Shown here one piece after another: positions 2,073-64,000 of a stretch of DNA of 64,000 nt. The DNA is from Octopus bimaculoides. Its lineage: Eukaryota. Within the stretch, counting starts at the first letter, position 1, and each line of letters opens with the position of its first letter. The stretch covers positions 2,914,519 to 2,978,518 of the forward strand of contig NC_068994.1 in assembly GCF_001194135.2 (NCBI RefSeq), written 5' to 3'. The position numbers were made by a program, and so were the translations under genes. The notes under the pieces were generated by a model. That model saw only the letters and a list, made by a program, of their open reading frames with translations, did no database searches and was not told where the DNA came from.

Positions 2073-2649
2073 ATATTTTCCTTTGATGACATTTTACCTG
2101 TCAAGAGCAAAACATGACTTTCTGCATATATATATATATATATATTCTTCCATTTGACAGCATGAATTTCCACATTTTCAAACAGACTTCAAACTAAGAA
2201 GATAATGCCTAAATATGGCACTAAAATAAAATGACAAAAAATCATAGAATCAAGCTCAATGATTTTAAAACTATGGACATAATAATTTTTTACATGAGAA
2301 TTATAGAAGGCAATCTTTATATAAACATAGATGAGTAGATATGCCTCTAGCAAAGATATTGGTAAAGTAAAGGAAAATGAATCTACACTATTCTTCTTCT
2401 TAACATTAAAATTATCTTTCAAATATAGCATTTTATCTAAATATCATTGCATTTATTTATTATTGTATAGGTTTTGTTGGAAGAAATGTTAATGTATCAA
2501 ATGTATCTAGCCTTATTACAAATGAGATATGAAAAGCAATCCCAAATACACATAACCACACATACATTCACATATTAAATATATTTTAAAAACATTTTAA
2601 ATACATTTATGAATTCACATTTCATTGGAACTCATTTTTGAAATATGAC

Positions 2650-2747
2650 TGCAATTTGTGAACAACAGCAGCAGTTACAGAAGAAGACTCCTACGAGATA
2701 CATGTTTTTCTTCTTTTACGACAACAACAAAAGATTAAACAATGAAG
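2650..2747 (+). other. Putative non-coding first exon of the relic unit (start approximate)
   Basis: Ends aagattaaacaatgaag|gtaaat, homologous to gattaaacaatgcag|gtaag at 50861-50880 and 59999-60018; shares cagcagttaca and gataca motifs. Confidence 0.55.
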
Positions 2748-8313: not shown

Positions 8314-9224
8314 ATAACTGAATTGAATTTTGTGTTTGTTATTTGAAGATAGAATGGTGAATACTTGCTTAAGTTTAAGCAAAAGAAAATGTACTTATAC
8401 ACAAAGTACTTAGATGAAGAGAGTATAAATGTGAGAACTCAGTAAGATGGTGCCTGTATCTCACTGATGCTTTAGTAAAGAATCACAATAGGATGTAGCC
8501 TTAATGAGAATACACCCTCTTCCATCTACTTCATACACAACATTTTATATAAACTCCTAAAATTTGAATTCTAATGTAAGCATACTTTGTGTCTTGCCTA
8601 TGGATTTTGTCTTGACTTCAAGTTAATTAGAACATAAATTCTCATCCTTATGTTGAGGTTGATGATATTCATCAAATTCACTCAGATCATTTTAAAAGGA
8701 ATCTATCTGTAGTTTAAATTACTATGAATTTCAAGAGATATAATTTATTTATTATGTGCTTTAGGTGTCCTTCACTTGACTAAGAGATAACTTTTGATGC
8801 AAAAATTCTGATAAAATAATAATGTAAGCAGTAAGTAAGTTAACACAACATTAACTATACTTTATTTCTGAACTACGTAAGCTATGTTAATATTTTGGTC
8901 ATTCAATAGTGTCATACCCACAACTCGGTGCTAATTTTGCATTAATTCATCTCAATTTCATTATTTCAAATTTAAAAAAAAATTCATTAAATTTTAGTTT
9001 CATTCACCACTTCATGACATAAATTTCCAAAATAGTTCCCAATATTATTTTTGCAAAAAGAGGGGCAACACGTATTTCCCAAATATTAATTTGATGCTAC
9101 AAATATTGTGGATAAATATCATAAATGTGAAGTGATCATTCATGTTGACTGTTTTAATCTAATAATAGAATTTCCATTTGTTTTTCAAGATACTGAGAGT
9201 CTGCAGGATTTGTGAAGAATCATA

Positions 9225-11621
9225 ATGACAAAAGAGAGTGGCTTATTCATCTGTCTACTACATACTTTACTACACTGTGTTCTAAGTGTAGATATCACTT
9301 ACCATGTCAACGAAGAAGATAGTCCTCACACTTACATAGGAAACATTGCTGCTGATTCTAACTTTTCTCAATCTCTCAAACATCATCAAGGAACTCCCAT
9401 TACATTTACACAGTTGCAAAGAACAATGTCAATGGGATCTCACTTATTCAATGTCACTAATTCTGGGAAACTATACACTACACACACACTTGATGCTGAG
9501 TCTCTATGCATTTACAAAAAAGAATGTTTTAAAATTGTCAAAGTAGCTGTTAGGAAAGAAGAAGCATTCATAAAAATATTAAAGATAAAGATAATAATTG
9601 ATGATATTAACGATAACCAACCAGAGTTTCCAGAAGATCAAATTAAATTAGAATTTGATGAAACTGAAGCAAAAGGTTCAACAAAATCAATACCAAATGC
9701 TGTGGATAAAGACATTGGTATTTTCAATTCTAACATCACATATGAACTGAAAGATAAAAGTAATACATTTATATTATCAATATTCAAAGAGTTTGATGGA
9801 ATGAAAATACTTAAAATAGCACTAGAAGGTAAGTTAGACAGAGAATTAAAAGACACTTATATGTTACAGTTAGTTGCAAAGGATAGTGGTTCTCCTCCCA
9901 AAGAAGATACTCTGAACATAGAGATATCTGTTATTGATGTCAATGATAATAGACCTATGTTTTCTCAGCAGATGTACAACATCACAATTAGTGATACACA
10001 TCATACATCTTCTCCTGTTTTTGTTTTATCAGCTACAGACTTAGATTCAGGTCAAAATGGTAATATCACATATAACTTTTATCAAAAAACAAGCTCTTAT
10101 CTCAAAACACATTTCAAACTGAAACCAGATGGAGAGATATTCCTAAATGAGGATTTTTACAGAAATAATCAACAAAAATATAAATTATATATTCAAGCCA
10201 AGGATAGAGGAAAACCATCTTTAAGTTCTTCAGCCACACTAATTATCAATGTAATAAGCAATCAAAATAATCTTCCAAATATAAACATAGATTTTGTATC
10301 ACCTTTAACAGTGAATTCTGCTGCTATTTCAGAAGCAAGTAAAATTGGGAGTTTTATAGCTTATGTTATGGTCACTGACACTGATAGTGGACCTAATGGA
10401 CAAATTAAATGCAATATTCACCATAAAATGTTCCAGCTTTCTAATATGGGGTCTAAAGAGTATAAAATATTAGTCAAAGAACCTCTTGACAGAGAAACTA
10501 TAGATCATTATGTTGTTTCTATTGAATGTCATGATATGGGATCACCTCCATTGAAGACTAAGAAACAGTTTTCTGTCAAAGTAACTGATGTCAATGATGT
10601 AGAACCACATTTTACCAAAGAGACATTCCAATTCCTCACCTATGAAAACCAGAAAGTTGACTTCCCTATTGGCTTCATCAATGCTACAGACCCTGATCTT
10701 GGAGATGGAGGCCAACTTACATATTCTATCATCAATGAGAACAAAAATGATAACATTCCTTTCCAACTGACAAAATATGGATTTATTTCTACATCACAAT
10801 CAATAGATCGAGAAGTAAAAGACATCTATAATTTACAGGTTTTAGTCAAAGATAATGGGACACCATCACTGAATAACACTGCCAATATTCTTATAGAGAT
10901 TCTAGATAAAAATGATAATGCTCCATATTTTATATTTCCTAATAATGATCCTTACAATCTAGATGTCCACTACCATCCACACAGTAAGAAGGACATCTCA
11001 ATTCTGAAAGCATCTGACAAAGATTCTGGAAACAATGCTTTCCTCACATATGGAATACTGAGATCCAATGATAAAAACCTGTTTACAGTGAACTCACACA
11101 CTGGTGTGTTATCTTTCTCTCGCACAGTTTACCAAAATGATGCAGGAACATATGAGCTGCAGTTTATAGTGAAAGACGGTGGTACTCCAGTTCAATCAGC
11201 AACAACTGCTATCATATTAACACTGTTTGTTAGTAATGATACATCTCCAATGTTAACTGCTGTCCACTCAAAGTCTGGTAACAACCTGAATATGACTTGG
11301 ATAATTATTATTGTAGCAGCAGCTGTAATACTATCTGTGGCCATTGTAGTGTCAATAACACTATGTGTTTTCAGATGTATTAATCATATTAATAATTCAC
11401 AAACAACAAAAAATAATCCAAAATTTCTTTCAAGGACTGAAATGAGGCAAATATTGTATCAGACTAACAATCCTGTAGCAATAACTAGAAATGCAGAAGA
11501 CATATTTAACAGAAATCTTCAGTCAATAAACCCCAAAACTTCCTATTACCCAGAGATGGAACAGCCAGCCAATGAATGGAAATTCTCAACAACACCTAGG
11601 CGATTGCCACCAGTTCCACAG
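9225..11621 (+). CDS. Protocadherin A, large exon: signal peptide, EC1-EC6, TM, juxtamembrane tail (799 codons)
   Basis: 810-aa ORF with LDAE/LDRE, DxNDNxPxF and A/TxDxD cadherin motifs, C-X5-C in EC1, TM WIIIIVAAAVILSVAIVVSITLCVF; donor ccacag|gtaaga at 11621/11622; acceptor tttttcaag at 9189. Confidence 0.95.
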
Positions 11622-15089: not shown

Positions 15090-15210
15090 CCTGATTCACA
15101 ATTCCAGTTCATCAATATATTGCTATTGCAAAATCACTGCTACACAGGAATACTATACCAGGATACATGTCTAGTTACATACTGTAACAACAATGGATTG
15201 GGCAATGCAG
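15090..15210 (+). other. Putative non-coding first exon of gene B (start approximate)
   Basis: Ends ggattgggcaatgcag|gtaagt; shares tacacaggaa(t/c)acta and caggataca with the exons ending 50875 and 60013. Confidence 0.55.
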
Positions 15211-15319
15211 GTAAGTCTTACTAAATTGTAATTTTGATTTGCTATATTTTCAGATATGCATCTTTTAATATTGAAACACAATAGATATATAACTAAAATT
15301 AAGTGTACAAGTCATTAAG

Positions 15320-18331: not shown

Positions 18332-18369
<38 letters not shown>

Positions 18370-18692
18370 TCACTGCCTGGAATCGAACTCAGAATCTTGG
18401 GATTAGTAGCCCACGGGCATATGGCATAGTGGTTAAGAACGTAGGCTACGAACCCCAAGATTCCGAGTTCAATTCCAGGCAGTGACCTGAATAATAATGA
18501 TAATAATAATAATAATAATAATAACATTGAAAAATACTTTAGGTTTGAAATTTCCTCAAGACACCTGATGAAGGCTGGAGGGTATATCAGCCGAAATGTG
18601 TTAACAACAAACAAGATGAGGACAAATATCCGTCAACTGTAAATAATGTAAATAATGTACATAATTCCTCATCTCTTAAATATAGAACTGTA
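18190..18692. mobile_element. Head-to-head inverted pair of a tRNA-headed repeat with a Penelope-type tail
   Basis: ~18190-18412 is the reverse complement of ~18445-18660; head gggcatatggcatagtggttaag...ctacgaa...aagattccgagttcaattcc, then (aat)n, then a tail ending cttaaatatagaactgta. Confidence 0.8.
18560..18602 (+). ncRNA. Degenerate minimal type I hammerhead ribozyme motif
   Basis: gacac-CTGATGA-a-ggctg(loop)cagcc-GAAA-t-gtgtt; stems I and II pair but the stem III/cleavage triplet is shortened relative to 43192-43237. Confidence 0.5.
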
Positions 18693-21818: not shown

Positions 21819-21868
<50 letters not shown>

Positions 21869-21870
21869 TT
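21020..21870. repeat. Nest of SINE family A fragments with (ATT)n tails, an intervening repeat, and a (TAG)n run
   Basis: Three taccag/tactag...ggtc...aactggccccc...cttgt.cctataatagaaaggattattatt segments (~21030, 21500, 21665); (gta)n at 21820-21868. Confidence 0.7.
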
Positions 21871-24800: not shown

Positions 24801-25499
24801 AGCATTTTCATTTAAATAAGGGATCTTAAGATAACAACTGTGTTACAGTGGTTTCTTTCTTTTTATCTTAGTGTTTCATTACACTCTCATAAAGATTTGT
24901 TGTGATGCAATGGTATGCCTGGGAAAGGAATAAATGTGGCAATGTCCATTTTCCCAACTCTATAAATCAAAAACTTTTATTAATATACACATAACTGTAT
25001 TTGCAATCTTTATCTATGAGGTCACTCTTAATCAAGCATAATAATACAATGGTAAATGATGGCATGTACTGATAATTGTAATATTAACTGAAGTAAATAT
25101 GAACAAAAACATTAAAAAAAACAATATGTCAGTAAATTTGTCAAATTCAACATTACATATGCATTTAACAATACTATCTGAATAACAAAAATGTTATTTT
25201 TAAGTTGTTGACTAATTTTTGTTTATTGAAATAAGTAAGAGATATACTTGCAAAATAAGTGAAAATATATTCAAATAAAATCGGTATTTCATAGATGTTT
25301 TTATCAAAATTACTTTTAAATCTATTTTTGATAGGGAAAATACATGAGAAAATGTTTTGTTTTTTTTTTTGTCAAAGGCTTTATGTATTTTATGTATTGT
25401 ACAGCAAGCTAACTGTTCTGTACTCAAGTAATTTTTCCTGTACTTAGAGTTCATGCAATAGCACAAATGAAGAGAAAAATGTTAGCTGCTGTCTCTCCC

Positions 25500-25616
25500 T
25501 ATCTGACTCACACCTCTAGTCCATCAATATTTTCACATTCTTGCTGCAGCAGTTATAAAGAACAGTACAGAGATGTAGCAGTCTTGTCACATACACTAAC
25601 TTCAACAAAAGAGCAA
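25500..25616 (+). other. Possible alternative or additional 5' non-coding exon of gene B
   Basis: Consensus donor caa|gtaagt at 25616/25617; contains gcagcagtta as in other first exons; no terminal ATG. Confidence 0.3.
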
Positions 25617-27385
25617 GTAAGTTTTTCCACATTGCATTCTTACACTTACAATTTTTAGAAAAAATATAATTTTAAAATATTTCTTTAAAAAGTATTTCTT
25701 TCAGAAAATATACAAATTTAACTTTTTTCTTTTATTATCAGAAGATAGTAATAAGTTTAGTTTGTATCTCACAAGGTGCTCACTCATCAAACAAATATTT
25801 AAATAGTTATATTACATTTATGATGCTAAAATATGAGTACTAAGTTTTTATTTACAATCAGTAATCATTTATTAGTGCCCAGAAAACAAGGAAATTGCTT
25901 TTCTTTGAGTTATTGTCTGTGAAAAAATGTTATGCATTTAAAGAGAAGTGATTTCAGTATATTAATGCATAATATGATTTATTTAAAAGTAAAAGTAATT
26001 ATTTCATTTACTCTTATTAATAAAAGAGAAAATACTGAAAGCGGTACAAATTTGTCATTATTACTCAATTTAATACCTTGCTTTTCTATCTGTTCACTAT
26101 AGACAAATTTTCCTACAAAATTAAATTGGCACAGACTTTTCTCCCCCACTAACTTTTCACATTTTCACATGCCCATAAAACTTTGTGAATAAGTTTAGTT
26201 GATCATGCTAGTATATAACTGATATTTATTTTATCAACCATTGAAGGCTGAAAGTCAATCCTGGCAGGATTTGAACACAGAACATAAAGCAATATAACCA
26301 TATACTGTGAGGAATTTTTTTTTGGCTACCTCAACTTTCTTTCATATAAAAAAATATGAAGGCTTAGCAGTTTATATTGGCATAGTTCATGGATGAGAGA
26401 ACCAGTAGGGCATCAAACAAGATATTTCATGGTATTTAGTTATGTCCTTTCTGAAGTTTTGATTTTCATCCTTCTGAAACAAGTGCCAGTCAAATACTAA
26501 GTTTGATATAATAAACTACACCCTTGAAGGCATTCAATGACTAAAAGTAATTTTTAAAAATACGACTATACAAGGCATTGGGATTACCACTTTATTGTAT
26601 TATTTGATTAACTGAGAAACTAAGATAATATCTATATAACAATTATACTTAGTGAACCTAAAACTTATTTTTTAATATTTTTGGTCCTCATACTTAGTTG
26701 TGTTACTAACCTGGTTTTAATGAGCTGGTTCTCAGAGCAAAGAAGGTTGGTATAAAACTATTAATATAGATTCTTTGATGCAAAGATCCCTTTGTTAGTC
26801 AAATAAAACAATATCAGACATAGAAGTGTTTACCTACATCAGCGTCACATTAGATGCAATCCTTTAGCCACATTGAACACAAACAGCTAGTTGTACACAA
26901 GAAAATTAAATACAAGGAAATATAAATAATTGTTTATGATTGAGAATAATTAGCAAGGTCTAAGAGGTTCAACAAAGACTGTACAAGGCTCTGAGATGTT
27001 TGTTTTGTGTTGTTACCATGGGAATTCGTAATCACAGTAACTGTCACACTCAAGAGATGTTCAGATAACTAAACTAAAACAGGAACCTGCTTACTAGTCC
27101 AGGTAATGAAATATGTGGCTTGTATACATGGTTCCTTTCTTCCAAAGTGACACCATCCCAACACAGTACTACTTTATATATAAGAATCATTATTGATAAA
27201 ATGTATGAGTGATAGAAAATTTGAAAACAAAAACAAAAGGAGTGAATCCATTGTAAATTCTTGTCAATGCTATGTAAACAAAAAGTGTGGATGAATATAA
27301 TTTTAATTTATGACCAATAATTATTATTTTTCTTTCTTTTAGATCTCAAATTAAAGATTATACTGAACTCTAGTACAAACCAAAA

Positions 27386-29785: not shown

Positions 29786-30334
29786 GTTGGTAAAATTTAT
29801 AACATTCATTTTATAGCTTAAATTCCCAGACATTTTAACCTCATTCTATATTTTTTAAGATTTACATTATATTTTAATTAATTTAATCCCTGAGCATATC
29901 ATGTACTACATTCCAAATATAGATGCATTTTTAAGGCTTAATCAGAGTGTTTATTTCTAATACTGAGTTTCAGACTTTTAACAACTGTGCCTCTACCCCA
30001 ACTTTTGAAATATGATACCACTTGAAACAATGTACAGCATGCATATGATATATGAAATTAATAGTACAGAAAATTTAATCATTACCACAATAACACATAC
30101 CAAAAATATAAACATATTTCTCAGATTTTTAGTTATATCTACCCTAGTTTCAAGGAATTAAAACAATGATATAGTTGTATATATCATATTTCTAAAACTA
30201 ACAAACTAGTCAAGACTAGACCAAGTCCCATTCATTTGGATTAAAATTTAGACTATGTTTGAATAATGACATAGCAGGTCAGTAAAAAATCAGGAAATAC
30301 CATTTCAAACAAAAATAAAAGAAACCTACTATTA

Positions 30335-47399: not shown

Positions 47400-48835
47400 G
47401 GTACAATAATTAATAATGATATTGGACACAATGGAGATGTTACATTCTCTTATTAAAAGACACCTTGACAAAGAAACATCTGTTGTATATCATGACATGG
47501 AATCATCTCCATTGAAGACTAAGAAACAGTTTTCTGTCAAAGTAACTGATGTCAACGATGTAGAACCACATTTTACCAAAGAGACATTCCAATTCCTCAC
47601 CTATGAAAACCAGAAAGTTGACTTCCCTATTGGCTTCATCAATGCTACAGACCCTGATCTTGGAGATGGAGGCCAACTTACATATTCCATCATCAATGAT
47701 AACAACAATGATAACATTCCTTTCCAACTGACAAAATATGGATTTATTTCTACATCACAATCAATAGATCGAGAAATGAAAGACATCTATAAGTTCAAGG
47801 TCTTAGTGAAAGATAATGGAACACCTTCTCTCAATGACACTGCCAATATTGTTATTGAGATTCTAGATAAAAACGATAATGCTCCCTATTTCATCTTTCC
47901 TAATAATGACCCTTACAATCTAGATGTCCACTACCATCCACACAGTAAGAAGGACATCACAATTCTGAAAGCATCTGACAAAGACACTGGAAACAATGCT
48001 TTCCTCACATATGGAATACTGAAATCCATCATCATCATCATTTCATGTCTGTTTTCCATGCTGGCATGGGTTGCACAGTTTGACAGGAGCTGTCCAGACT
48101 CCATTTGTCTGTTTTGGCAAGATTTCTACAGCTGGATGTCCTACTTAGTACCAGCCACTTTACAGAGTGTGCTGGGTGTTGCACTTACACGCTGATGTGC
48201 TATCTTTCGCGGACAATTTACCAAAATGTTTCAGAAACATATGAGCTGACCTTAACAAGTGATGTAATAGCATTACTAGCACAATAGAACATGGTATTGA
48301 CTTATAACACCATTTACTCTACTTTGTAATATATTATGGTTGCATAACAAAATACCATGTTCTTAAAGTCATTAATATTAGCTGGAGTTTATAGTGGTAC
48401 TCCAGTTCAATCAGCAACAGCTGCTATCATACTAACATTGTTTGTTAGTAATGATACATCTCCAATGTTGACTGCTGTCCCATTCCAGTCTGGTAACAAC
48501 CTGAATATGACTTGGATAATTATCATTGTAGCAGCAGCTGTAATACTATCTGTGGCTATTGTAGTGTCCATAACACTGTGTATTTTTAGATGTATTAATC
48601 ACAAAATAACTCACCTACAACAACAGATAATCCAAACTTTCTCTCTCAGACTGAGATGAGACAATTACTGTATCAGACTAACAATCCTGTTGCAATAACG
48701 AGAAATGCAGAAGAGATATTTAACCGAAATCTTCAGACAATAAAATCTAAAAGTCAGTTTTTTCTGGAGATGGAACAGACACCAGATGAGTGGAAATTCT
48801 CCACAACACAAAGGAGACTTCCACCTGTGCCTCAG
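47400..48835 (+). pseudogene. Protocadherin C pseudogene: 5'-deleted large exon (part of EC4 to tail)
   Basis: No EC1-EC3 found upstream; deleted EC4 remnant at 47400-47505; EC5-6 near-identical to paralogs; SINE insertion at ~48025, further non-homologous sequence ~48250-48390, frameshift near 48600; donor cctcag|gtaaat at 48835. Confidence 0.88.
48025..48193 (-). mobile_element. Family C repeat fragment inserted into EC6 of pseudogene C
   Basis: atcatcatcatcatttcatgtctgttttccatgctggcatgggttg is the reverse complement of the family C tail at ~55085-55130. Confidence 0.75.
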
Positions 48836-49151
48836 GTAAATATTATTTTATGTCACTGATATCCTTTTGATTTTAAATGCAAAAGTATTTTATTGATTAT
48901 TCACATATGTTCAAACATTTCTATAAAATATCAACTTCAGAAACTCATGTGTATGAGCTGTTTTATTCCTTTGCTTAAAATTTATAGTCTATCTGCGACT
49001 TTCTGAATTAACTATTCTTTTTTGTTTAGTGATAGTTAAACAGTTACAATGCTCATTATAGAAATATAATACTCTTTATATAAAGACTGTTTTATTAGGT
49101 GTGATCTAGACTTGTATTGATATAATTTTTTATCTTTTCTATAATCAACTG

Positions 49152-49543: not shown

Positions 49544-50432
49544 TAGATGTTCCATGACTATTGTTAAATGATTCTCTCACACACCAAATCTTATACAATA
49601 CTTTATATTCATATAAAAATATCAACTCTTTGTTTCTTTCACACATCACACATAAATGGCCTTACATTGGTTTTTGTTATGACCCCTGATTTACATCTCT
49701 GATACCTCAAATACTAGAAATGCCCTTATCTATATTATCATTGATGACAGTATATTGGGCTCATTGAATGTTATATTTAATTTTCTAAGCTCCAGTTTTA
49801 GTGTGATTCTAATTTCTATATTTACATCTACCATTTGTAGCATAAAACAACATAAAAGTTTTGCTATTATATCATTTAACTAATGATATTAATCTGGAGG
49901 TTCTGCAGAATGTTGTCATATTTTGTAGTATCCACAGCATCTGAGAGAAGAGTAATAATAAATTTAGCATAATATGAAGTAAAGTGAAATATTACATGAA
50001 AAATGTTTACATCTAGTGTTGAATTTCGATTGAGTAAATCTTATGAATACTCCCCAAATTAAATACATTCCAACACTAAAGATTTCTAATTTGTCCATTC
50101 ACTTAAAATGTGGCTATACGAATATTTCATAGAAATAATAAAATACAGTTTTTATGCAGCAAAAGCCATTATGAATAATTTACATTTACTGTTGTTGCCT
50201 AATAGCTGTTGTTTAGATTTCTTTTTGCCACGTTTGTATCAACAATGTCTATTTCTTTAACTAACATTGAATTTTTTATTGTTACAAGAATCTTTTTATT
50301 GCTAGGATATACTACAATCAGTTTAATATTAAAAAATACTTAATAACAGAACTAAATAGGATACTCCTCGATTAATCACACTATCTATAAAATATATGAA
50401 AGATAATTACACATAATTCATCAAACAGCTTC

Positions 50433-50875
50433 TGTTTAACATGAATTCTCTTGTTTGATGTGTTTTGTGTGACACAGACAACATTGCAGTAATTTCCTAT
50501 TGGATGAGAGAGATTTTCTAGATTTCTTTCAATATTGAAAGTGAGGCTGATAGCTTTTTTCTTTGTTCATCATACACACAATTGTGTGTGTGTGTGTGGA
50601 GGACATAGAGTTGTAACTAGCACACACCAGCATCTGGCTAACATCTCACCTCCCACTACATACAGCAACTGTCACACTATTATATCAGCAGTTACACAGG
50701 AACACTACCACCACCACTACAACAACAGCAGCAGCAGTAACATAGGAACACTACTATAACAGCAGCAGTACCACTATAATACCACTTCAGCAGCAGCAGC
50801 AGTTAGAGTGGAACACTACAGCAGGATACACATCATCCATCACACACAACTACAGTGAAGGATTAAACAATGCAG
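50433..50875 (+). promoter_or_regulatory. Putative promoter plus non-coding first exon of gene D
   Basis: Reverse CCAAT (cctattgg ~50497), CA/CAG-rich exon ending gattaaacaatgcag|gtaagt; near-identical to 59575-60013. Confidence 0.6.
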
Positions 50876-52584
50876 GTAAGTCTCTCTCTTTATTATCTTT
50901 TTATATTTTCATTTCCATTATAATATTTATATTGTATGTGTTTCTAATGTAAGACAGTGTAACACTACAATGTAAAATGTTCACCATGTTGTGTGTGTGT
51001 ATATACACACAGGGACTTGGACAGTAGAGGATAGAGAGATCAAGCCATCACTTCCGCCATTAATAACAGCAACATTGGTGGTAGTAGTGGTAGTAGTGGT
51101 GGTGGTGGTGGTAGTATTAGTAGTAGTAGTTTGTCCCCTTATTTTTAAAACACATATATACACACCTTTATTTGTAAAAACCATACGAATCTGTCCACAA
51201 TCAGAGAATTTACCTTCAATTAATTCCATACTGTCTTCTAAATATTCTTTTAAACATTTTCGTAAATAGTATTGGTGTAATATAGTTTAAATAGGAGACA
51301 TGTGTTTCATTACATGTCATAAAACATATATTGATCTGCCAATAATATAGAGTTGAGTTTTATGAATTCGTTTCTCTGTGTTTGGATTATAACATTTCTT
51401 TAATAAATATAATCTCTCTTAAAAAGGTTTACATGATTAGATATTTACAATAATAATAAGAATACGAAGCATCTTATTTTACCAGATTTAATTATGAAAG
51501 AAACATTGTGTGGAGATTTACATCCAAGATGGTGGAAGACAGTGGATGATAGAAATTAACCTGGAAATAACAATTTGAAATAGAATTAAGATGAATGTTT
51601 AATGTCACATTTTCTGTGCTATATTTTTATCTCATAAGAATTTTGGCTGACTTTCTGCTGTATATTGGTTTGCAAGAACCGTTTCTTTTCCTATTAATTG
51701 TTGAACCTTTCAGTATTTATTTTTTATTGGAACTACTATTTGTTTTTTGCTAATCTGTTGTAAAATAAAAGTTTCTTGTAGTTCAGTTCACTTCCTTCAT
51801 TTGAAACTGTCTCCTTTAATTTGTAAGCATTCTAATATTTATTTTAACTCTACAAGTCTTAATTTCATTTAAAGAAAGCAATTAAAGATTTGATTGATAT
51901 TACGGTCAGAATGTAGGCCAAGATAATCCAAAGACCTCATGTGCAGCAACGAAACAATGCTTACATTGTAATATATTTCACTTCAGTGGCCTTCATGTCC
52001 TTCCTTACAAACAGAAAGACAAACTAAAATTTCAAAACAAAATACAAGGAAAATTGTAAAATTATTGATAGATTAATATGTGAATTGTTCATTGATTATT
52101 ACTGGAGTTCAATTTTAATGCATTTTTGATAGATTATTGTATGTAGCTGACGTTTCATTAACTAGTCTCTCATATCTTTAATTATATATCTTCTAGTCTC
52201 TACTAGAAATCCTCCTCTGCAATACCTATTTATTTTGAATACATGTCTACATGTCCATAATTTCACTATTTATGCACATGCATTGCTATTTAAAACTCTT
52301 GAATTTAAAATCTCTAACAAACATCATACTTCCACCAGAAACTCACATTAACATCAACATTATTGTTACATGTTTAATGTTCCATTATATTGTATTAAAT
52401 ACTTTTCATTTTGTATATGTAGTAATCACTAATTGTTCAGTGCCAACATACAGATGCAAATATTGCAGTAAGAATGGTAGAAAGCCTGTGTTATTGCAAC
52501 TACTTGGCTGTTTAGAAATTAGATTTCATTTTCCTTTATTATTTATACAATCCTTTTCTCTTTTTAATATTGTCTCTGATATTC

Positions 52585-53172: not shown

Positions 53173-53182
53173 NNNNNNNNNN
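53173..53182. other. 10-N assembly gap with duplicated flanks
   Basis: tggcatcagtgctagagacattgtcttgtcaccaaggatacctccagtg appears directly before and after the Ns. Confidence 0.9.
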
Positions 53183-55130: not shown

Positions 55131-55421
55131 GATATATAAAATTTTCAAAAGAACGCCTCAGATGAGTATTGTTTACAACGTCTAGGGGAGATAACTCTAA
55201 TGTAAACCCGGACTATTTCTTCACACTAATAGGAACACGTAAAAACATTTAATTTTAATGATTTTCTTTCACAATTTTCAAATCTATTTTTAATGTACAG
55301 TACTCCAAGGTTTATATTTGATGAACTTTCATGTCAAAATTTTTCTTTAAGCTGGTATTAAACCATTTCTATTATACTTGTAGAAATATTCAATAATAAT
55401 GAGGAATGAAGAGTTGCAGTC

Positions 55422-58039
55422 ATGAATGAAAACATTTTTTACTTGGTGTGTTTGCTATATACACAACAGTCTCTTGTAATGTCTGTAGACATCACCTACC
55501 ATGTCAACGAAGAAGACAGTCCTCATACCTATATAGGAGACATTGCTGTTGACTCTAACTTATCACACCCTCTCACACATCAACAACACACTCTCATTAC
55601 ATTTACACAACTACAAAGGACAGTCGAGAGTGGTTCTCACTTATTTAATGTCACCAACTCAGGAAAACTATACACTACTCAAACACTGGATGCTGAGTCT
55701 CTGTGTACATACAACAAGGAATGTTCCAGAATAGTTAAAGTAGCAGTGAGGAAAGGAAAAACTTTCATGAAGATTTTGAAGGTGAAAATAATAATAGAAG
55801 ACATCAATGACCATTCTCCAGAATTTACGGATGATGAAATAGGTATCAAGTTTGCAGAGGATAGTCTGAAAGGAAATAAGAAAAAAATTCCATATGCTAT
55901 AGACAGAGATATTACCGTCATAAATTCCCAAATTTCATATAACATAAAATACCATAAAAGAGAACCATTTTCTTTGTATATGGCAAAAGATAATGATGGT
56001 GTTTTTATACCTGAACTGACGTTAGAAGACAAATTAGACAGGGAAGTAAAGGATTTGTATATATTGACCTTAGAGGCTAAAGATGGCGGGAAAATTCCGA
56101 AAACAGCTACGCTCAAGGTACGCATATCTGTGACAGATGTTAATGATAACACACCTGTATTTTCACAGAAACTCTACAACATCTCTATAAATAATTCACA
56201 TCAAAGACATTTACCAATTCTTACTTTAAAAGCCACAGATCAAGATTCTGGACAAAATGGAAAGATATCTTATCATTTCAACCATAAAACATCTCAAAAT
56301 ATCCAGAAATATTTTGTATTGGATAAGAAAACAGGAGATTTATTTTTACATGATAATTTTCACTTTAGTAAGATGCAGTCTTTATTTATAGAAGCAAGAG
56401 ATGGAGGGAATCCACCACTAAAGTCGGTAGCCAGAATTCACATTTATGTAATTAATAACCAAAACAATGTTCCATTGATAAATATAGATTTTGTATCTCC
56501 TTTAACAGAGAGTTCCACAGCTGTTTCAGAAAACAGTGAAGTAGATAGTTTTATAGCTTATGTTATGGTCACTGACACTGATAGTGGACCCAATGGTGAG
56601 GTTATCTGTGATTTAAAACATGATAAGTTTAAACTTGCCAAAATAGATTCTAAAGAATATAAGATAATTATTAAGGGCCATCTTGACAGAGAAATAAGGG
56701 ACCACTATAAAGTATCTATTGTGTGTCATGACATGGGGTCACCTCAACTAGAAAGTAAAAAATATTTCTCTGTCAAAGTAACTGATGTCAATGATGTAGA
56801 ACCACATTTTACCAAAGAGACATTCCAATTCCTCACCTATGAAAACCAGAAAGTTGACTTCCCTATTGGCTTCATCAATGCTACAGACCCTGATCTTGAA
56901 GATGGAGGCCAACTTACATATTCTATCATCAATGATAACAACAATGATAACATTCCATTCCAACTGACAAAATATGGATTTATTTCTACATCACAATCAA
57001 TAGATCGAGAAATGNNNNNNNNNNNNNNNNNNNNNNNNNNNNNNNNNNNNNNNNNNNNNNNNNNNNNNNNNNNNNNNNNNNNNNNNNNNNNNNNNNNNNN
57101 NNNNNNNNNNNNNNNNNNNNNNNNNNNNNNNNNNNNNNNNNNNNNNNNNNNNNNNNNNNNNNNNNNNNNNNNNNNNNNNNNNNNNNNNNNNNNNNNNNNN
57201 NNNNNNNNNNNNNNNNNNNNNNNNNNNNNNNNNNNNNNNNNNNNNNNNNNNNNNNNNNNNNNNNNNNNNNNNNNNNNNNNNNNNNNNNNNNNNNNNNNNN
57301 NNNNNNNNNNNNNNNNNNNNNNNNNNNNNNNNNNNNNNNNNNNNNNNNNNNNNNNNNNNNNNNNNNNNNNNNNNNNNNNNNNNNNNNNNNNNNNNNNNNN
57401 NNNNNNNNNNNNNNNNNNNNNNNNNNNNNNNNNNNNNNNNNNNNNNNNNNNNNNNNNNNNNNNNNNNNNNNNNNNNNNNNNNNNNNNNNNNNNNNNNNNN
57501 NNNNNNNNNNNNNNNNNNNNNNNNNNNNNNNNNNNNNNNNNNNNNNNNNNNNNNNNNNNNNNNNNNNNNNNNNNNNNNNNNNNNNNNNNNNNNNNNNNNN
57601 NNNNNNNNNNNNNNNNNNNNNNNNNNNNNNNNNNNNNNNNNNNNNNNNNNNNNNNNNNNNNNNNNNNNNNNNNNNNNNNNNNNNNNNNNNNNNNNNNNNN
57701 NNNNNNNNNNNNNNNNNNATAATTATCATTGTAGCAGCAGCTGTAATACTATCTGTGGCTATTGTAGTGTCCATAACACTGTGTGTTTTCAGATGTATTA
57801 ATCACACAAATGACTCACCTACAACTGCAGATAATCCCAACTTTCTCTCTCAGACTGAGATGAGACAATTACTATATCAGACTAACAATCCTGTTGCAAT
57901 AACAAGAAATGCAGAAGAGATATTTAACCGAAATCTTCAGACAATAAAATCTAAAAGTCAGTTTTTTCTGGAAATGGAACAGACACCAGATGAGTGGAAA
58001 TTCTCAACAACACAAAGGAGACTTCCACCTGTGCCTCAG
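55422..58039 (+). CDS. Protocadherin D, large exon (EC5-EC6 partly in an N gap; integrity unproven)
   Basis: Open from ATG 55422 through EC5 to the gap at 57015; TM and RRLPPVPQ after the gap; donor cctcag|gtaaac at 58039; acceptor ttgtag at 55383. Confidence 0.85.
57015..57718. other. 704-N assembly gap
   Basis: Run of N in the EC5-EC6 region. Confidence 1.
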
Positions 58040-58382
58040 GTAAACACAATTTTAGCTGTTGTATCTTAAATCTCATGTAAATATCATTTTGGAAAAAAAA
58101 TGTTTTTGTTTTATTTCTTATTATTATAAAAATTATTTTATCCATTATTCACATCTGTACAGTTATTACTACATAAAACTCAACTTCAGTCACTTGTGTG
58201 TACAACATTTTTTATGTCTTTAGCTAATATTTATTGCAACGCTCTCACAGTTGAATTGATTATTCTTTATAATTTTAGAGATATCAAAAGACATACAATA
58301 TTCATTATAGAAATACAAACTGAATAATTAGGAGTGATCTAAACTTGTATTTATACAGGATTTCTCCTTATATAATCAACAG

Positions 58383-58766: not shown

Positions 58767-59574
58767 TAGATGTTCCATGACTATTGTTAAATGATTCTCT
58801 CACACACCAAATCTTATACAATACTTTATATTCATATAAAAATATCAACTCTATGTTTCTTTCACACATCACACATAAGGGCTTTACATTGGCATCTGTT
58901 ATGACCCCTAATTTACATTTCTGATGCATTAAATGCTAGAAACACCTTATTTTATATTACCATAGTACATTATTATAAAATTATTTTTTTACTTTCATTT
59001 TGGTATAGGCATTTCACTAAACATAGATAAATTAATCTGAGTCATCCAAGAATGTTTAATTGTGGCATCTTTTAGTTTCACACCAATTCTAATATGTATC
59101 TTCTGCTGTTTTATCTTTATTTACAAATTTTGTCTTTGCATTTTCTTACTGTATCAACTTTAGAAGTACTTTTACTAATTACCAAATTGATAATTGTTTT
59201 AGACGTAAATAGCTCACTTCCAGCATACTACAAATAGCTAATCATATTTTAAAATAGCAAAGTTTCATCTTTTACAAAGTGGCATATTGAAGATAAATTA
59301 GTATATTTCTAGAAAATAATTTTTGCATTCAAAATAATTTATTTGAAAATATTTTCATTTCCACACTTAAAATTAGGTTAATTTAAACTTTAATTAAAAT
59401 GAACTTTAAAAGTGATCAAATTTTGGTTATCTTTTACTAAGATTTACATCTCTCTGCAGAAATATTTAAAATTGTATAATAATAAGTTTTGAATTTCTCA
59501 AGTAAATTTTTAATTTCTGGACAGAAAATATGTAATATGGTGATATTATTACATATCAACTATGAAGTTCCTTG

Positions 59575-60013
59575 TGTTTAACATGACTTCCCTTATTTGA
59601 TGTGTTTGTGTGACACAGACATCATTGCAGTAATTTCCTATTGGATGAGAGAGATTTTCTAGATTTCTTTCAATATTGAAAGTGAGGCTGATAGCTTTTT
59701 TCTTTGTTCATCATACACACAATTGTGTGTGTGTGTGTGGAGGACATAGAGTTGTAACTAGCACACACCAGCATCTGGCTAACATCTCACCTCCCACTAC
59801 ATACAGCAACTGTCACACTATTATATCAGCAGTTACACAGGAACACCACCACCACTACAACAACAGCAGCAGCAGTAACACAGGAACACTACTACAACAG
59901 CAGCAGTACCACTATAATACCACTGCAGCAGCAGCAGCAGTTAGAGTGGAACACTACAGCAGGATACACATCATCCATCACACACAACTACAGTGAAGGA
60001 TTAAACAATGCAG
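59575..60013 (+). promoter_or_regulatory. Putative promoter plus non-coding first exon of gene E
   Basis: Near-identical to 50433-50875; ends gattaaacaatgcag|gtaagt. Confidence 0.6.
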
Positions 60014-62309
60014 GTAAGTCTCTCTCTTTCTCTTTCTTCTCTTTTCATATTTATTATAACATTTGTTTAATATGTGTTTCTAATGAAAGACGGTAAGGAT
60101 AATATCTAAAATGTCTGCCATGTTGTATATTTATATACACAGGGACTGGGATAGTGGAGGATCGAGAGATCTAGCCATCATTTCCACCATTAATAGCAAC
60201 AACCATTGCAGTAGTCATTGTAATACAATTACTTTGAACTGGATTATGTCTTTTAATGTCAGAATCACGCAAGAAACATCTATACAAGAAGTATTAAACT
60301 ATATATTTTGCTGTGATATCTCTTATATATAATGGTTTAATATTGTCCAAATAGATATATGTATATGTGGTGTGTGTGTGTATTATTTAACTGTCAAAAC
60401 ATTGATTATAGCCAATAATACTGGGTGTTAATAATGTATGTCAATATAGTTTATGTTTTGCCATAATAATTCACTAAGCTTTTAATGACTTCTAACAAAT
60501 CACTAATATCCCTATATATATATATATATATCCATTATATATCCATTATATAATCCTTCGTGCATTATAAGCAAAGAATGTTCCTCATCACCATCATCAT
60601 CCTCAATATCATTACAATGGATGATAAATATAATCTTGTCTAGCTTTCTTATTCAGATATTTTGTGTGAAATATAAACTTATTTTGTTATCATGTTGATC
60701 CATAACAGAGTTTTATTGAAACAATCCTGTTGTTCATCTGTTTCTCTCATTTGCAGTGTAAGTGAAGAGATAATGGTTGCAGTCATGTTGTCTATGACAA
60801 GTCTGATTGTAATTGTTTGGGTATATTCTCTGACTGCCTCAGTTTCTTTATCTATCCTTTTGTCTGCCTCCAATATGATTACTTCAACTTCCCAGTGCTG
60901 TTACCTATCCAGAAGAATATAGACATGACTTTTGCCTCTAAAAAGTTTAACTGCGGCTCCCCTCTTCTACACATTATACATCTACTGGCTTCATCTCTAC
61001 AATCTCTCCAGACCTAACTTTTTATTGTCTCGATCTTCCTGTTGGCAGCCCTGGAGTGATTTACCTAATAAAAGGAAGAGGATTCCTATTTTGGGGTTGG
61101 TTGTTGTTTGAAATTTCTGTTCTGTGCATTCAATAGATGACAGTTGTGGAGCTTTCTCCTGTGGTCAGATGTTTCCATCTAATGACTCCATACTGTGCAT
61201 AACATAAATATTACAAGTGTTAGTTCTATCTATGCAATGAAAGTTTTACATAATATTGGCAGCCATCATAATTTTCACATAACTCTGTTGACTGGATACC
61301 CTTCCTATGATCATCCATTTCACAGTACGAACTAGCTGCATTTTATCATGCCACCATTACTAAACAGGCTTCTGTCAAGACTAAGCTGCCCTTCTGCCTT
61401 CTGCGAGGTTATTTTTTTCCTAGATGGCTTTACGTTGCCACAGCTTACAGAGTCAACATCTCTTCAGAGTATGTGATTTTTTGAAGTAACTGTTCTCTTA
61501 GATGGATTACATTTATTGCAGCTTGTAGGGAATATGTCTCCTTTGTGCAGACTTTAATTAAGAAACTATAATGCTGCTAGATATGCTCACAAGGTATCCA
61601 ACAAAAATTAATTATAGCTCTCAGTATATTGTAGCAGATAGAGGAGAAAAAGGGTAGAGAAAAGAAACAGGAACATATGAAAGGGAGAAAGAGAGAAGAA
61701 AGTGCAAAACTAAGACACAGAGAGACGTATGGTGGAATATGAGAGGGACATTGAGACGGTGATGAAGGAGAATATCATATAAATAGAGAGAAGTGAGGAC
61801 ACAGAAATACATATAAGGGGTTTTTGCTTTGTTTCTTATTAGACTGAATTCAAATAAAGGACTCTGGAACCTAGAAATAATAATTAAAACACTATAGAAT
61901 CCTTAAAAAGTTTTTGATGCTCCCTTGTCACTGGGAGCATTCATGTTATTTATATGCATCATTTCTAAGGAAATGCCATTTTCAGAATAGAATATATGTG
62001 TGCCTGAAGGTGTTTATATTGGTGTGTGTATTGAGGAATGGAGCTTGGCTTCAGATTTCTTCAAGAAGTATTGCACACACTTCTACAATATAAAGATATG
62101 TTTTGCATTACATTTATTCTTTCAACCAGAAATAGAATCATTAACAGCAGTATCAAATAATATTTTAACATATAACTACAGTGTGGATTAAATTCTTATA
62201 CATCCAAGTTTAGATTAAACATTTGTTATTAAGTATAGCAATGTAACTTAAAGAATCTCTGATTATTTACTCAACAAATATCCTTGCTTACTTTAATAGT
62301 AAGCCATTG

Positions 62310-62510
62310 TAAGTGGCAAGCAGCCAGAGCCATCAGCACATCGGGTAAAATGCTTCGAGGTATTTCATCCATCTTCACATTCTGAGGTTGATTTACCTTT
62401 TATCCTTTCAGGGTCAATCAAATAAATACCAGTTGAGCACTAGGATCAATATATGCCAATTAACACTTACCCAAAAATTGCTAGCCATATGCCATAATTT
62501 GGAACCAGTA
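62310..62510 (+). mobile_element. SINE family A copy (old)
   Basis: gtggcaagcagccagagccatcagcacatcgggtaaaatgc...tttaccttttatcctttcagggtcaatcaaataaataccagttgagcac. Confidence 0.65.
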
Positions 62511-62841
62511 TCAAGCCATTGTCTCTTTCTAAGTACTTTCTGAATAGTAAATCATGAAACTTGTCAAACCAAAATATTCTAAATGCAATTCTAAGCACAG
62601 AAAGGTTGCTGCCTTATTCCAAGGAAGTAGCATCATCTGTATATTGTGAGTTAGCGTGTTAGATTAGAAAAAATGCAATTTTAAATTATTTAGAGCACAT
62701 GAAAAAGATATACAAACAATTATCATTTATATAATGGTTATTATAGCTTTGAATGAACTTATTTTATTCTACTTAATGTTTAACTATTTGTTGTCTTTTA
62801 TAGCAATTTCTCCTACTGAAATGTGATGAAGAATTCCAGAC

Positions 62842-64000
62842 ATGACACCATATATTGGTCTACTGTGTCTTCTACATTTACTGATCACCCTTGTACTGTC
62901 CATAGATATTACATACCATGTCAAGGAAGAAGACAGTCCTCACACCTATATAGGAGACATTGCTGTTGACTCTAACTTATCACACCCTCTCACACATCAA
63001 CAACACACTCTCATTACATTTACACAACTACAAAGGACAGTCGAGAGTGGTTCTCACTTATTTAATGTCACCAACTCAGGAAAACTATACACTACTCAGA
63101 CACTGGATGCTGAGTCTCTGTGTACATACAACAAGGAATGTTCCAGAATAGTTAAAGTAGCAGTAAGGAAAGAAGAAACATTTATGAAAATATTAAGAAT
63201 TAAAATACTCATAGATGACATCAATGACCATTCTCCAGAGTTTCCACAGAATGAAGTTGAAATTGAATTTCTTGAGAGCCACCTTAAAGGTACTAAAATC
63301 TCTCTTCTTAATGCCATTGATGAAGATATTTCAATAAACAATTCTCAAATTACATATATGATTAAAAAAAGTAATAGAGAACCTTTTTCTCTCTCTGTCA
63401 CAAAACGTGATGGTATTTTTATACCTGAACTGATTCTAGACAACAAATTGGACAGGGAAATAAAAGATTCATATATGTTGATCTTGGAAGCTAAAGATGG
63501 AGGCAACTTTCCCAAAACAGCTACACTCAAGGTACACATAGCTGTAACAGATGTCAATGATAAGGTACCTGTATTTTCTCAGAAACTTTACAACATCTCT
63601 ATAAATAATTCGCATCAAAGACATTTACCAATTCTTACTTTAAAAGCCACAGATCAAGATTCTGGACAAAATGGAAAGATATCTTTTTATTTCAACCATA
63701 AAACATCTCGAAATATCCAGAAATATTTTGTATTAGATAAGAAAACTGGAGATTTATTTTTACATGATAATTTTCAGTTTACTAAGATGCAATCTTATAA
63801 ATTATTTATTGAAGCAAGGGATGGAGGAAAACCACCCAAAAAGTCTGTTGCAGCAGTTCAGATTCATGTAGTTAATAACCAGAATAATGCTCCGTTGATT
63901 AATATAGATTTTGTATCTCCTTTATCAGAGAGTTCCACAGCAGTTTCAGAAGCAAGTAAAATTGGTAGTTTTATAGCTTATGTTATGGTCACTGACATTG
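62842..64000 (+). CDS. Protocadherin E, 5' part of the large exon (runs off the window; absent from the ORF track)
   Basis: ATG ACA CCA... gives MTPYIGLLCLLHLLITLVLSIDITYHVKEEDSPHTYIGDIAVDSNL..., continuing through EC1-EC3 into EC4; acceptor cttttatag at 62803. Confidence 0.92.
   Translation, partial: MTPYIGLLCLLHLLITLVLSIDITYHVKEEDSPHTYIGDIAVDSNLSHPLTHQQHTLITFTQLQRTVESGSHLFNVTNSGKLYTTQTLDAESLCTYNKECSRIVKVAVRKEETFMKILRIKILIDDINDHSPEFPQNEVEIEFLESHLKGTKISLLNAIDEDISINNSQITYMIKKSNREPFSLSVTKRDGIFIPELILDNKLDREIKDSYMLILEAKDGGNFPKTATLKVHIAVTDVNDKVPVFSQKLYNISINNSHQRHLPILTLKATDQDSGQNGKISFYFNHKTSRNIQKYFVLDKKTGDLFLHDNFQFTKMQSYKLFIEARDGGKPPKKSVAAVQIHVVNNQNNAPLINIDFVSPLSESSTAVSEASKIGSFIAYVMVTDI

What the first reader, a model, noticed from the sequence alone, without database searches (positions are those of the whole stretch)
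60008..62845. Third stop-start uORF in gene E despite divergent leader sequence
Seen: ATG CAG| (60008-60013) joined to 62804 reads MQQFLLLKCDEEFQT* with TGA at 62843-62845 overlapping ATG 62842, again 38 nt. The leader differs strongly from gene D, yet length, frame, absence of earlier stops and an acidic (N/D/C)EE end are kept in A, D and E. Inference: conserved translational coupling. Caveats: ATGA starts are common in AT-rich DNA, and gene B gives only MQISN* without overlap.
Basis: partly seen in the sequence, partly recalled or inferred. Interest (0 to 1): 0.7.

Follow-up and report, generated by a model that had tools for sequence, protein, structure and literature searches.

The report
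Short upstream ORF in octopus protocadherin
An octopus protocadherin gene seems to carry a small non-coding first exon whose last six bases (ATG CAG) would, once spliced, open a 15-codon mini reading frame that stops exactly on the real start codon; the upstream ATG is shared by most related genes examined, but the exact stop-on-start overlap is not, so this is an ordinary kind of translational brake rather than a new mechanism.

Summary
ATG CAG (60008-60013) is followed by GTAAGT. An acceptor AG at 62802-62803 is followed by a 38-nt leader. The joined reading is MQQFLLLKCDEEFQT*, and its TGA (62843-62845) overlaps the main ATG (62842).

The window is a tandem array of Octopus-type protocadherin genes. 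A conserved exon-1-like element ending GGATTAAACAATG[C/A]AG|GTAAGT lies 1.7-12 kb upstream of the coding exons where the flank was available. It keeps the ATG in 14 of 16 copies. Among eight E-type copies from three species, conservation starts sharply at the predicted acceptor. A cuttlefish RNA-seq contig carries the exon-1 block just upstream of its start codon. The exon pairing is therefore well supported, but I obtained no octopus transcript.

The stop-start overlap occurs only in the A, D and E lineages (3 of 9). Five lineages stop after 3-5 codons and one runs 140 nt into the coding sequence. Keeping the frame open between D and E is not surprising (46% of simulations). Substitutions among E-type leaders are mostly synonymous in the uORF frame (6 of 8), which is suggestive but rests on small numbers.

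Verdict: a real, family-wide upstream ATG and short uORF, a new member of a known kind. Selected "translational coupling" is not shown.

The parts
59906..60013 (+). Conserved 3' part of gene E's non-coding exon 1. The true 5' end (TSS) is unknown. Composition turns A/C-rich at about 59750-59760.
   Evidence: nhmmer profile hit, E=7.4e-32. 91.6% identical to the D copy across 59571-60208 vs 50429-51077. Homologous block found in a Sepia esculenta RNA-seq contig.
60008..60010 (+). Upstream ATG (uATG), 6 nt before the donor, context AACAATGC (A at -3).
   Evidence: ATG at this position in 14 of 16 exon-1 copies. No other ATG for 363 nt upstream in E.
60014..60019 (+). Splice donor GTAAGT. The exon ends in phase 0 after ATG CAG.
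60014..62803 (+). Predicted intron 1 of gene E (2790 nt).
   Evidence: Intron sequence is not conserved among E-type copies (35-45% ungapped identity).
62784..62803 (+). Polypyrimidine tract and acceptor AG (tatttgttgtcttttatag).
   Evidence: Identity among E-type copies jumps from 66% here to 93.5% in the leader.
62804..62841 (+). Exon-2 leader, 38 nt. It carries codons 3-15 of the predicted uORF (QFLLLKCDEEFQT).
   Evidence: pN/pS is about 0.09 in the uORF frame among 8 E-type copies, with 6 of 8 variants synonymous.
62842..62845 (+). ATGA: the main start codon (62842-62844) overlapping the uORF stop TGA (62843-62845).
62842..64000 (+). Gene E protocadherin coding exon (signal peptide plus cadherin repeats). 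It runs off the window.
   Evidence: 88% to an O. sinensis and 86% to an O. vulgaris protocadherin.
50768..50875 (+). Gene D exon-1 element, ending ATGCAG|GTAAGT.
55384..55425 (+). Gene D 38-nt leader plus ATGA. The uORF reads MQKYSIIMRNEELQS*.
2641..2747 (+). Gene A exon-1 element, ending ATGAAG|GTAAAT.
9190..9228 (+). Gene A 35-nt leader plus ATGA. The uORF reads MKILRVCRICEES*, with TAA at 9223-9225 overlapping ATG 9225 (TAATG).
15109..15210 (+). Gene B exon-1 element, ending ATGCAG|GTAAGT (12.1-kb predicted intron).
27343..27385 (+). Gene B 43-nt leader. The uORF is only MQISN*, and its stop lies 34 nt before the main ATG.

Best explanation
Gene E is a clustered-type octopus protocadherin with a two-exon 5' end. 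A short non-coding exon 1 is spliced at 60013^62804 onto the large coding exon. Exon 1 ends in a motif shared across the paralogs examined, GGATTAAACAATG[C/A]AG|GTAAGT. Its ATG sits in a good initiation context and in phase 0, so the mature mRNA carries a short uORF.

In most paralogs this uORF is 3-5 codons long. In the E lineage (and in D and A) no early stop occurs and the frame runs to the TGA/TAA embedded in the ATGA/TAATG of the main start.

The most likely function is generic uORF-type damping or gating of protocadherin translation. Ribosomes that start at the uAUG must terminate and reinitiate, or are lost, and the main AUG is reached by reinitiation and/or leaky scanning.

The exact stop-on-start overlap is best read as one lineage-specific form of this family-wide uORF. 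It is kept in E-type copies by descent and by exon-limited homogenisation (gene conversion), possibly with some selection on the peptide. It is not a family-conserved coupling device.

Shown: the sequence anatomy, conservation of exon 1 and the uATG, and the exon boundary. Inferred: splicing in octopus, use of the uAUG, and any effect on translation.
For: - Anatomy.
- Exon-1 element upstream of the coding exons in the window, O. vulgaris, O. sinensis and O. bimaculoides loci wherever the flank was available. ATG is 6 nt before the donor in 14 of 16 copies.
- Sharp onset of conservation at the acceptor among 8 E-type copies: intron 35-45%, leader 93.5%, CDS 95-99%.
- A Sepia esculenta RNA-seq contig carries the exon-1 block 70-160 nt upstream of its start codon, whereas in octopus genomes it lies kilobases away and is followed by GTAAGT.
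- The uORF from the shared uATG ends before or on the main ATG in 8 of 9 leader lineages. It has 3-5 codons in 5 of them and 13-15 codons with overlap in 3.
- E-type leader variants are 6 of 8 synonymous in the uORF frame, against 18-27% expected. pN/pS is 0.09, compared with 0.15 in the adjacent CDS.
- Gene conversion among cephalopod protocadherins has been reported (PMC9068888).
- uORFs of 10-30 codons are common and act through leaky scanning or reinitiation (PMC10275272).
Against: - I obtained no octopus transcript, TSS or ribosome-profiling evidence. The window's own proteins are not in the collection, and two Logan contigs turned out to be genomic.
- The whole 16-nt motif is conserved, not the ATG specifically, so the ATG could be a passenger.
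- Two copies lack the ATG (L004:17347 and Sepia).
- Several exon-1 lineages have other ATGs 12-100 nt upstream, so the uATG need not be the first AUG.
- The synonymous-bias signal rests on 8 sites, or about 5 events (p between about 0.002 and 0.07).
- Acceptors outside the E type were chosen by eye.
Confidence: 0.5

Rival explanations
1. The stop-start overlap (AUGA/UAAUG) is itself the selected feature. Ribosomes terminating the 13-15-codon uORF reinitiate on the overlapping main AUG, coupling protocadherin synthesis to uORF translation in genes A, D and E.
For: - Overlap in three leader lineages whose first 24 nt are not recognisably alike, against about 0.9 of 9 expected from my rough estimate (P about 0.05, lineages not independent).
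- Leader length is 2 mod 3 in 7 of 9 lineages.
- All 10 E-type copies in three species keep the overlap.
- Mostly synonymous variation in the uORF frame.
- Overlapping AUGA/UAAUG is the classic termination-reinitiation layout (PMC10275272, PMC5972666).
Against: - Six of 9 lineages lack the overlap, including close relatives of the D-type leader.
- 46% of simulated divergences keep the frame open.
- ATGA starts are general here (7 of 9 lineages).
- No TURBS motif 1 (UGGGA) and no significant structure in the spliced leader.
- Short-uORF reinitiation normally needs an intercistronic spacer to reacquire the ternary complex (PMC5972666), so a zero-distance overlap predicts low reinitiation.
- E-type copies are homogenised, so they do not amount to 10 independent observations.
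Confidence: 0.2
2. The upstream ATG is a passenger. The conserved block GGATTAAACAATG[C/A]AG is kept for a DNA- or RNA-level reason, such as a promoter-proximal transcription-factor site or a splicing or RNA-binding signal at the exon end. The uORF has no selected role, and the main AUG is reached by leaky scanning.
For: - The whole block, not just the ATG, is conserved across lineages.
- From my own knowledge, GGATTA is the K50 homeodomain (Otx/Pitx-type) core and AACAATG a SOX-type core. This is a lead, not tested.
- Two copies lost the ATG while keeping the rest of the block.
- uORF lengths and positions vary freely.
Against: - The ATG and the A at -3 persist in O. bimaculoides copies whose block has otherwise drifted (GGATTTTACACAATGAAG).
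- The uORF is terminated before or on the main ATG in 8 of 9 lineages and never fuses in frame with it.
- The synonymous bias in E-type leaders is not expected for a purely nucleotide-level signal.
Confidence: 0.2
3. The exon pairing is wrong. The element at 59906-60013 is not spliced to 62804 (for example it is a separate non-coding transcript, a relic, or joined elsewhere), so no such uORF exists in mRNA.
For: No octopus transcript was recovered. A second exon-1-like copy at 5718-5811 upstream of gene A shows that such elements can be supernumerary.
Against: - A consensus donor at the element's end in all 16 copies.
- One element per gene unit, always on the gene's strand, between the previous gene's 3' end and the next coding exon.
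- A strong acceptor exactly where conservation begins.
- The Sepia mRNA contig joins the element to the leader.
Confidence: 0.08

Closest known systems
Ordinary short upstream ORFs of animal mRNAs (reinitiation 'scenario 1' of PMC10275272; GCN4/ATF4-type and DENR/MCT-1-dependent uORFs, PMC5972666)
   Same: [quoted passage not shown]
- 3-15 codons, so short enough for post-termination 40S subunits to resume.
- Neuronal genes. [quoted passage not shown]
   Different: - The start codon sits on the last six bases of a separate 5' exon, so the uORF exists only after splicing.
- In E, D and A the stop overlaps the main AUG, whereas in typical uORF reinitiation the restart codon lies downstream of the stop.
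- The uATG is shared by many tandem paralogs.
Termination-reinitiation at overlapping stop-start codons (calicivirus VP1/VP2, influenza B M1/BM2 UAAUG, victorivirus/hypovirus; cellular GAD UGAUG)
   Same: AUGA/UAAUG overlap of an upstream stop with the downstream start, out of frame.
   Different: - Those systems follow long ORFs and depend on an upstream TURBS or other structured element pairing with 18S rRNA.
- Here the upstream ORF is 13-15 codons.
- No UGGGA motif and no significant structure is present.
Conserved-peptide uORFs (CPuORFs, e.g. AdoMetDC MAGDIS, plant CPuORF families)
   Same: Among E-type copies the leader varies mostly at synonymous sites of the uORF frame (pN/pS about 0.09).
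   Different: - Peptides of the A, D and E lineages share only EE plus a few conservative pairs (BLOSUM test p=0.10).
- Other paralogs have 3-5-codon uORFs.
- There is no evidence of peptide-dependent stalling.
Vertebrate clustered protocadherin promoters with a conserved sequence element (CSE) before each variable exon
   Same: A short conserved non-coding element repeated in front of every member of a tandem protocadherin array.
   Different: - The vertebrate element is a promoter DNA motif bound by CTCF upstream of a variable exon that is spliced to shared constant exons.
- Here the element is (part of) a transcribed 5' exon with a donor site.
- Cephalopods duplicate whole genes instead (PMC9068888).
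- No sequence similarity was tested or claimed.

Membership tests
Upstream ORF (generic uORF) | An AUG in the mature 5' leader upstream of the main AUG | tested here: inconclusive
   The ATG at 60008 lies in a conserved exon-1 element with a consensus donor. Its presence in mature octopus mRNA is inferred from conservation and a Sepia transcript. No octopus RNA was seen.
Upstream ORF (generic uORF) | An in-frame stop giving a short ORF distinct from the main ORF | tested here: met
   After joining 60013^62804 the ORF is 15 codons with TGA at 62843-62845, in the +1 frame relative to the main ORF.
Upstream ORF (generic uORF) | Translated, and affecting main-ORF output | not testable with these tools
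   This needs ribosome profiling or reporters.
TURBS-type termination-reinitiation | Overlapping or closely adjacent stop and restart codons | tested here: met
   ATGA in E and D, TAATG in A.
TURBS-type termination-reinitiation | Upstream motif 1 (UGGGA) complementary to 18S rRNA within a structured element | tested here: not met
   No TGGGA in the spliced E leader (59571-60013 plus 62804-62845). Fold z-score is -0.49.
TURBS-type termination-reinitiation | The upstream cistron is a long ORF | tested here: not met
   The upstream ORF is 13-15 codons.
Conserved-peptide uORF | Purifying selection on the uORF amino-acid sequence across homologues | tested here: inconclusive
   E-type copies have 6 of 8 variants synonymous and pN/pS 0.09, but this amounts to about 5 independent events. 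D vs E BLOSUM score is 19 against 8.7+/-7.6 simulated, p=0.10. The A leader is unalignable before GAAGAA.
Conserved-peptide uORF | The uORF is present with similar length in orthologues and paralogues | tested here: not met
   Lengths are 3, 3, 3, 5, 5, 13, 15, 15 and 56 codons in nine leader lineages.
Octopus clustered protocadherin gene | Signal peptide plus tandem cadherin repeats in one large exon, in a same-strand tandem array | tested here: met
   Pfam Cadherin/Cadherin_2 hits and named Octopus protocadherins at 86-88% identity. Five same-strand units in the window.

The most novel reading that the evidence does not exclude
All or most of the more than 100 clustered protocadherin genes of octopuses share a dedicated 5' exon whose terminal, strongly placed uAUG forces every mRNA through a short uORF. 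This would be a common translational gate, possibly DENR/MCT-1- or eIF2-sensitive, for a gene family thought to give neurons their identity. In the E subfamily the uORF would have become a 15-residue peptide under purifying selection that ends on the main start codon.
Probability: 0.2. Interest if true: 0.6.

Novelty: new member of a known kind. Interest (0 to 1): 0.35.

Why it matters
Protocadherin expansion is one of the headline features of cephalopod genomes, and how these genes are regulated is essentially unknown. A shared 5' exon with a conserved upstream start codon would mean that protein output from the array is filtered at translation as well as at promoter choice. It would also give annotators a simple sequence handle (GGATTAAACAATGMAG|GTAAGT) for finding the true first exon and promoter of each gene.

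The specific stop-on-start overlap in gene E is a textbook-type arrangement. On present evidence it does not need a new mechanism.

Tried and rejected
- Exact-protein look-ups of window genes D and A, to identify the species and find transcripts. Nothing was on record. D's '766-aa ORF' spans a 704-N assembly gap.
- Logan contigs chosen as possible octopus transcripts. L007 and L010 look genomic: L007 has an intron-like acceptor and an adapter tail, and L010 has an intergenic stretch. Only the Sepia contig L003 comes from RNA-seq.
- A third protein search with the first 110 residues of E, to fish for short RNA-seq fragments. It gave only 2 hits.
- A metagenome scan for the exon-1 motif. None matched the exon-1 profile beyond the 18-mer, so all are chance matches.
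- Rfam over the whole window found no family. RNA folding of the spliced leader was not different from shuffles. The TURBS motif is absent.
- ATG depletion of E's exon 1. There are 0 ATGs in the 250 nt upstream, but P=0.105 by dinucleotide shuffles, which is not significant.
- A D-vs-E peptide similarity test gave p=0.10, not significant.
- pN/pS beyond codon 120 of the CDS was discarded, because ungapped comparison breaks down there.
- Literature search found no paper in the held library that contains 'octopus', 'protocadherin' and 'uORF' together among the top-ranked papers. Nothing on a 5' exon or UTR appeared in the three protocadherin papers I checked.
Full report
**What the window is.** The window is AT-rich eukaryotic DNA (GC about 0.32). 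It carries a same-strand tandem array of protocadherin genes:
- A: coding exon 9225-11657
- B: 27386-29821
- C: a 5'-truncated, frameshifted fragment at 47425-48838
- D: from 55422, with a 704-N assembly gap inside its coding sequence
- E: from 62842, running off the window

E's first 386 residues are 88% identical to an Octopus sinensis protocadherin, 86% to an O. vulgaris one and 67% to an O. bimaculoides one. The window's own proteins are not in the collection. The source is therefore an Octopus-type genome that I could not name.

**Check of the observation.** Every coordinate is right.
- ATG CAG is at 60008-60013, followed by GTAAGT.
- A polypyrimidine tract and AG end at 62803.
- Exon 2 begins CAATTT at 62804, with 38 nt to the main ATG at 62842.
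- TGA at 62843-62845 overlaps that ATG.

The joined reading is MQQFLLLKCDEEFQT*. The main ORF starts with a signal-peptide-like sequence and cadherin repeats.

The same construction gives MQKYSIIMRNEELQS* in D (38 nt, ATGA). In A it gives MKILRVCRICEES*, where the leader is 35 nt, not 38, and the stop is a TAA in TAATG, one codon before the TGA. In B it gives MQISN*.

**Is the exon pairing real?** ATGCAGGTAAGT occurs three times exactly, against 0.43 expected. Each occurrence is the end of an element of about 110 nt.

A profile of these elements finds one copy upstream of the coding exons wherever the upstream flank was available, 1.7-12 kb away. This holds in the window and in loci from O. 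vulgaris (L001, L004, L008), O. sinensis (L002, L009) and O. bimaculoides (L005). All 16 copies end in a donor. Their last block reads GGATTAAACAATG[C/A]AG|GTAAGT.

Among eight non-redundant E-type copies, ungapped identity changes as follows:

| Region | Identity |
|---|---|
| Intron | 35-45% |
| Polypyrimidine tract | 66% |
| 38-nt leader | 93.5% |
| Following coding sequence | 95-99% |

The conserved block therefore starts at the predicted acceptor.

One Logan contig comes from Sepia esculenta larval RNA-seq. It carries the 5' block of the exon-1 element (blastn E=0.001 to O. bimaculoides and window-A copies) only 70-160 nt upstream of its start codon. That is what a spliced 5' exon would give.

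I found no octopus transcript. Two other Logan contigs look genomic. I rate the pairing as well supported but not proven.

**What is conserved and what is not.** The upstream ATG sits exactly 6 nt before the donor in 14 of 16 exon-1 copies. That is about 6 of 8 independent lineages. It is lost in one O. vulgaris copy and in the Sepia transcript. Its context (A at -3) is favourable. In D/E-type exons it is the only ATG for about 355-366 nt upstream. That depletion is not significant by itself (P=0.105 for 250 nt), and other lineages do have further ATGs nearby.

Reading from this ATG across the junction gives the following in nine distinct leader lineages:
- Five lineages have uORFs of 3, 3, 3, 5 and 5 codons, ending 17-53 nt before the main ATG.
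- The A, D and E lineages have 13, 15 and 15 codons ending on the main ATG.
- One lineage (L004_b) has 56 codons running 140 nt into the coding sequence.

The shared feature is therefore a short uORF, not the overlap. The relatives of D's leader and signal peptide (L004_a, L007) have an immediate stop, and their internal ATG falls in other frames.

The D and E gene units align at 85-96% almost everywhere, except across the intron end, the leader and the signal peptide. That segment was evidently exchanged with another paralog type. Even so, the two leaders align without gaps, with 22 of 39 nt identical.

**Chance versus selection for the overlap.**
- The overlap needs a leader length of 2 mod 3, an A after the main ATG, and no stop in 11-13 codons.
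- ATGA starts are the rule here (7 of 9 lineages).
- At this base composition an open frame of about 12 codons has a probability of roughly 0.4 (my estimate).
- 46% of simulated D/E-like divergences keep it open.
- With a per-lineage chance of about 0.1, three of nine gives P of about 0.05, and the lineages are not independent.

Two observations lean the other way.
- First, 7 of 9 leaders have length 2 mod 3 (post hoc binomial p about 0.008, with several acceptors picked by eye).
- Second, among E-type copies 6 of 8 distinct nucleotide variants are synonymous in the uORF frame, where 18-27% is expected. Summed pN/pS is 0.09, against 0.15 in the first 120 codons of the coding sequence.

Counted as about five events, the p-value for the second observation lies between about 0.002 and 0.07. 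All synonymous changes sit in three Leu codons and one Lys codon. The 3' 20 nt are invariant even at synonymous sites, which looks more like nucleotide-level constraint or a gene-conversion tract. The D-vs-E peptide similarity is not significant (p=0.10).

**Mechanism.** Reviews separate two situations. Reinitiation after short uORFs normally uses a restart codon downstream of the stop and needs an intercistronic spacer to reacquire initiator tRNA. Termination-reinitiation at overlapping AUGA/UAAUG follows long ORFs and depends on a TURBS-like element (PMC10275272; PMC5972666).

The E leader has no UGGGA motif, no significant structure (z=-0.49) and no Rfam match. A 15-codon uORF ending on the main AUG would therefore most likely act as a brake. 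The main AUG would be reached by leaky scanning, or by inefficient zero-distance reinitiation. A DENR/MCT-1-type route, described for very short strong-context uORFs and reported as enriched in neuronal genes, remains possible.

I therefore favour a family-wide uORF brake or gate, of which E's overlap is a lineage-specific form. The alternatives are selected coupling in A/D/E, and a passenger model in which the ATG is merely part of a conserved DNA or RNA motif. From my own knowledge, GGATTA and AACAATG resemble K50-homeodomain and SOX cores, and GAAGAA resembles a splicing enhancer. These resemblances are untested.

**Novelty.** Among the top-ranked papers returned, none in the held library combines octopus, protocadherin and uORF, and the cephalopod protocadherin papers I checked do not describe a 5' exon. 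Gene conversion among these paralogs is known (PMC9068888). uORFs and stop-start overlaps are well-known devices, so this is a new member of a known kind. The conserved first exon with its terminal uATG is the more useful finding for annotation and for studying regulation of this family.

**Limits.** No orthologues of the A- and D-type leaders were obtained. The E-type copies are homogenised paralogs or orthologs, not independent samples.

Noticed in passing
window 5718-5819: A second, weaker exon-1-like element (nhmmer E=6.9e-6) ending ACCAATGAAG|GTATGT. It lies between gene A's exon 1 (2641-2747) and its coding exon (9190). It could be an alternative first exon or the relic of a lost gene unit.
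   Followed up: partly
window 57015-57718 and 53173-53182: Runs of N (assembly gaps). The first lies inside gene D's coding exon, so the '766-aa ORF' at 55422-57722 and the minus-strand ORF at 56986-57774 are artefacts. D's coding sequence resumes at about 57749-58063.
   Followed up: yes
window 47425-48838: Gene 'C' is a protocadherin fragment matching only residues 416-800 of gene A. It has a frame change near 48012-48605 and no leader, signal peptide or exon 1, so it is probably a truncated pseudogene.
   Followed up: partly
window 62804-62889 vs 55384-55472: Genes D and E are 85-96% identical across exon 1, upstream blocks and the coding sequence from 62890/55473 onward. The intron 3' end, the leader and the signal peptide do not align by BLAST. 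This mosaic suggests recombination or gene conversion with another paralog type (D's signal peptide resembles L004_a/L007).
   Followed up: partly
nine leader lineages (window A, B, D, E; L004 around 1023 and 10001; L005 10001 and 16518; L007 1949): The distance from acceptor to main ATG is 2 mod 3 in 7 of 9 lineages (35, 38, 38, 56, 26, 35, 44 nt, against 43 and 22). The shared uATG is thus nearly always in the +1 frame of the main ORF, even where an early stop makes this irrelevant. This is unexplained and post hoc.
   Followed up: partly
L003 352-390 (Sepia esculenta RNA-seq contig): The cuttlefish protocadherin leader lacks the exon-1 terminal ATG. It has its own 12-codon uORF (MDFTFALHKRSS*) whose TAA ends 2 nt before the main ATG at 393. 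This is another near-abutting uORF in a distant relative.
   Followed up: no
window 59750-60007 (also 50610-50869): The D/E-type exon 1 is strikingly A/C-rich (T 16%, G 14%) with CAG/CAA runs. A (GT)n tract and a sharp composition change at about 59730-59760 may mark the promoter/TSS. In O. vulgaris (L001 from 14213) one frame stays open for 170 codons purely because of this composition.
   Followed up: no
window 15211-27342: Gene B's predicted first intron is 12.1 kb, several times longer than those of A, D and E (2.8-6.4 kb). I did not examine its contents (possible repeats or relics).
   Followed up: no
L007 1907-1913: Tandem acceptors 6 nt apart (ttttcag|ATTTAG|AGATAT). Use of the second would remove the immediate TAG and lengthen the uORF from 3 to 7 codons, so uORF length could depend on acceptor choice.
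   Followed up: no
L002 vs L009 (O. sinensis contigs VCDQ01010532.1 and VCDQ01002641.1): The two contigs share the same layout almost to the base (coding starts at 263/264 and 10001; exon-1 ends at 4866/4867), and all leaders checked are identical. They are probably haplotigs or a very recent segmental duplicate. I counted them once in the statistics.
   Followed up: partly
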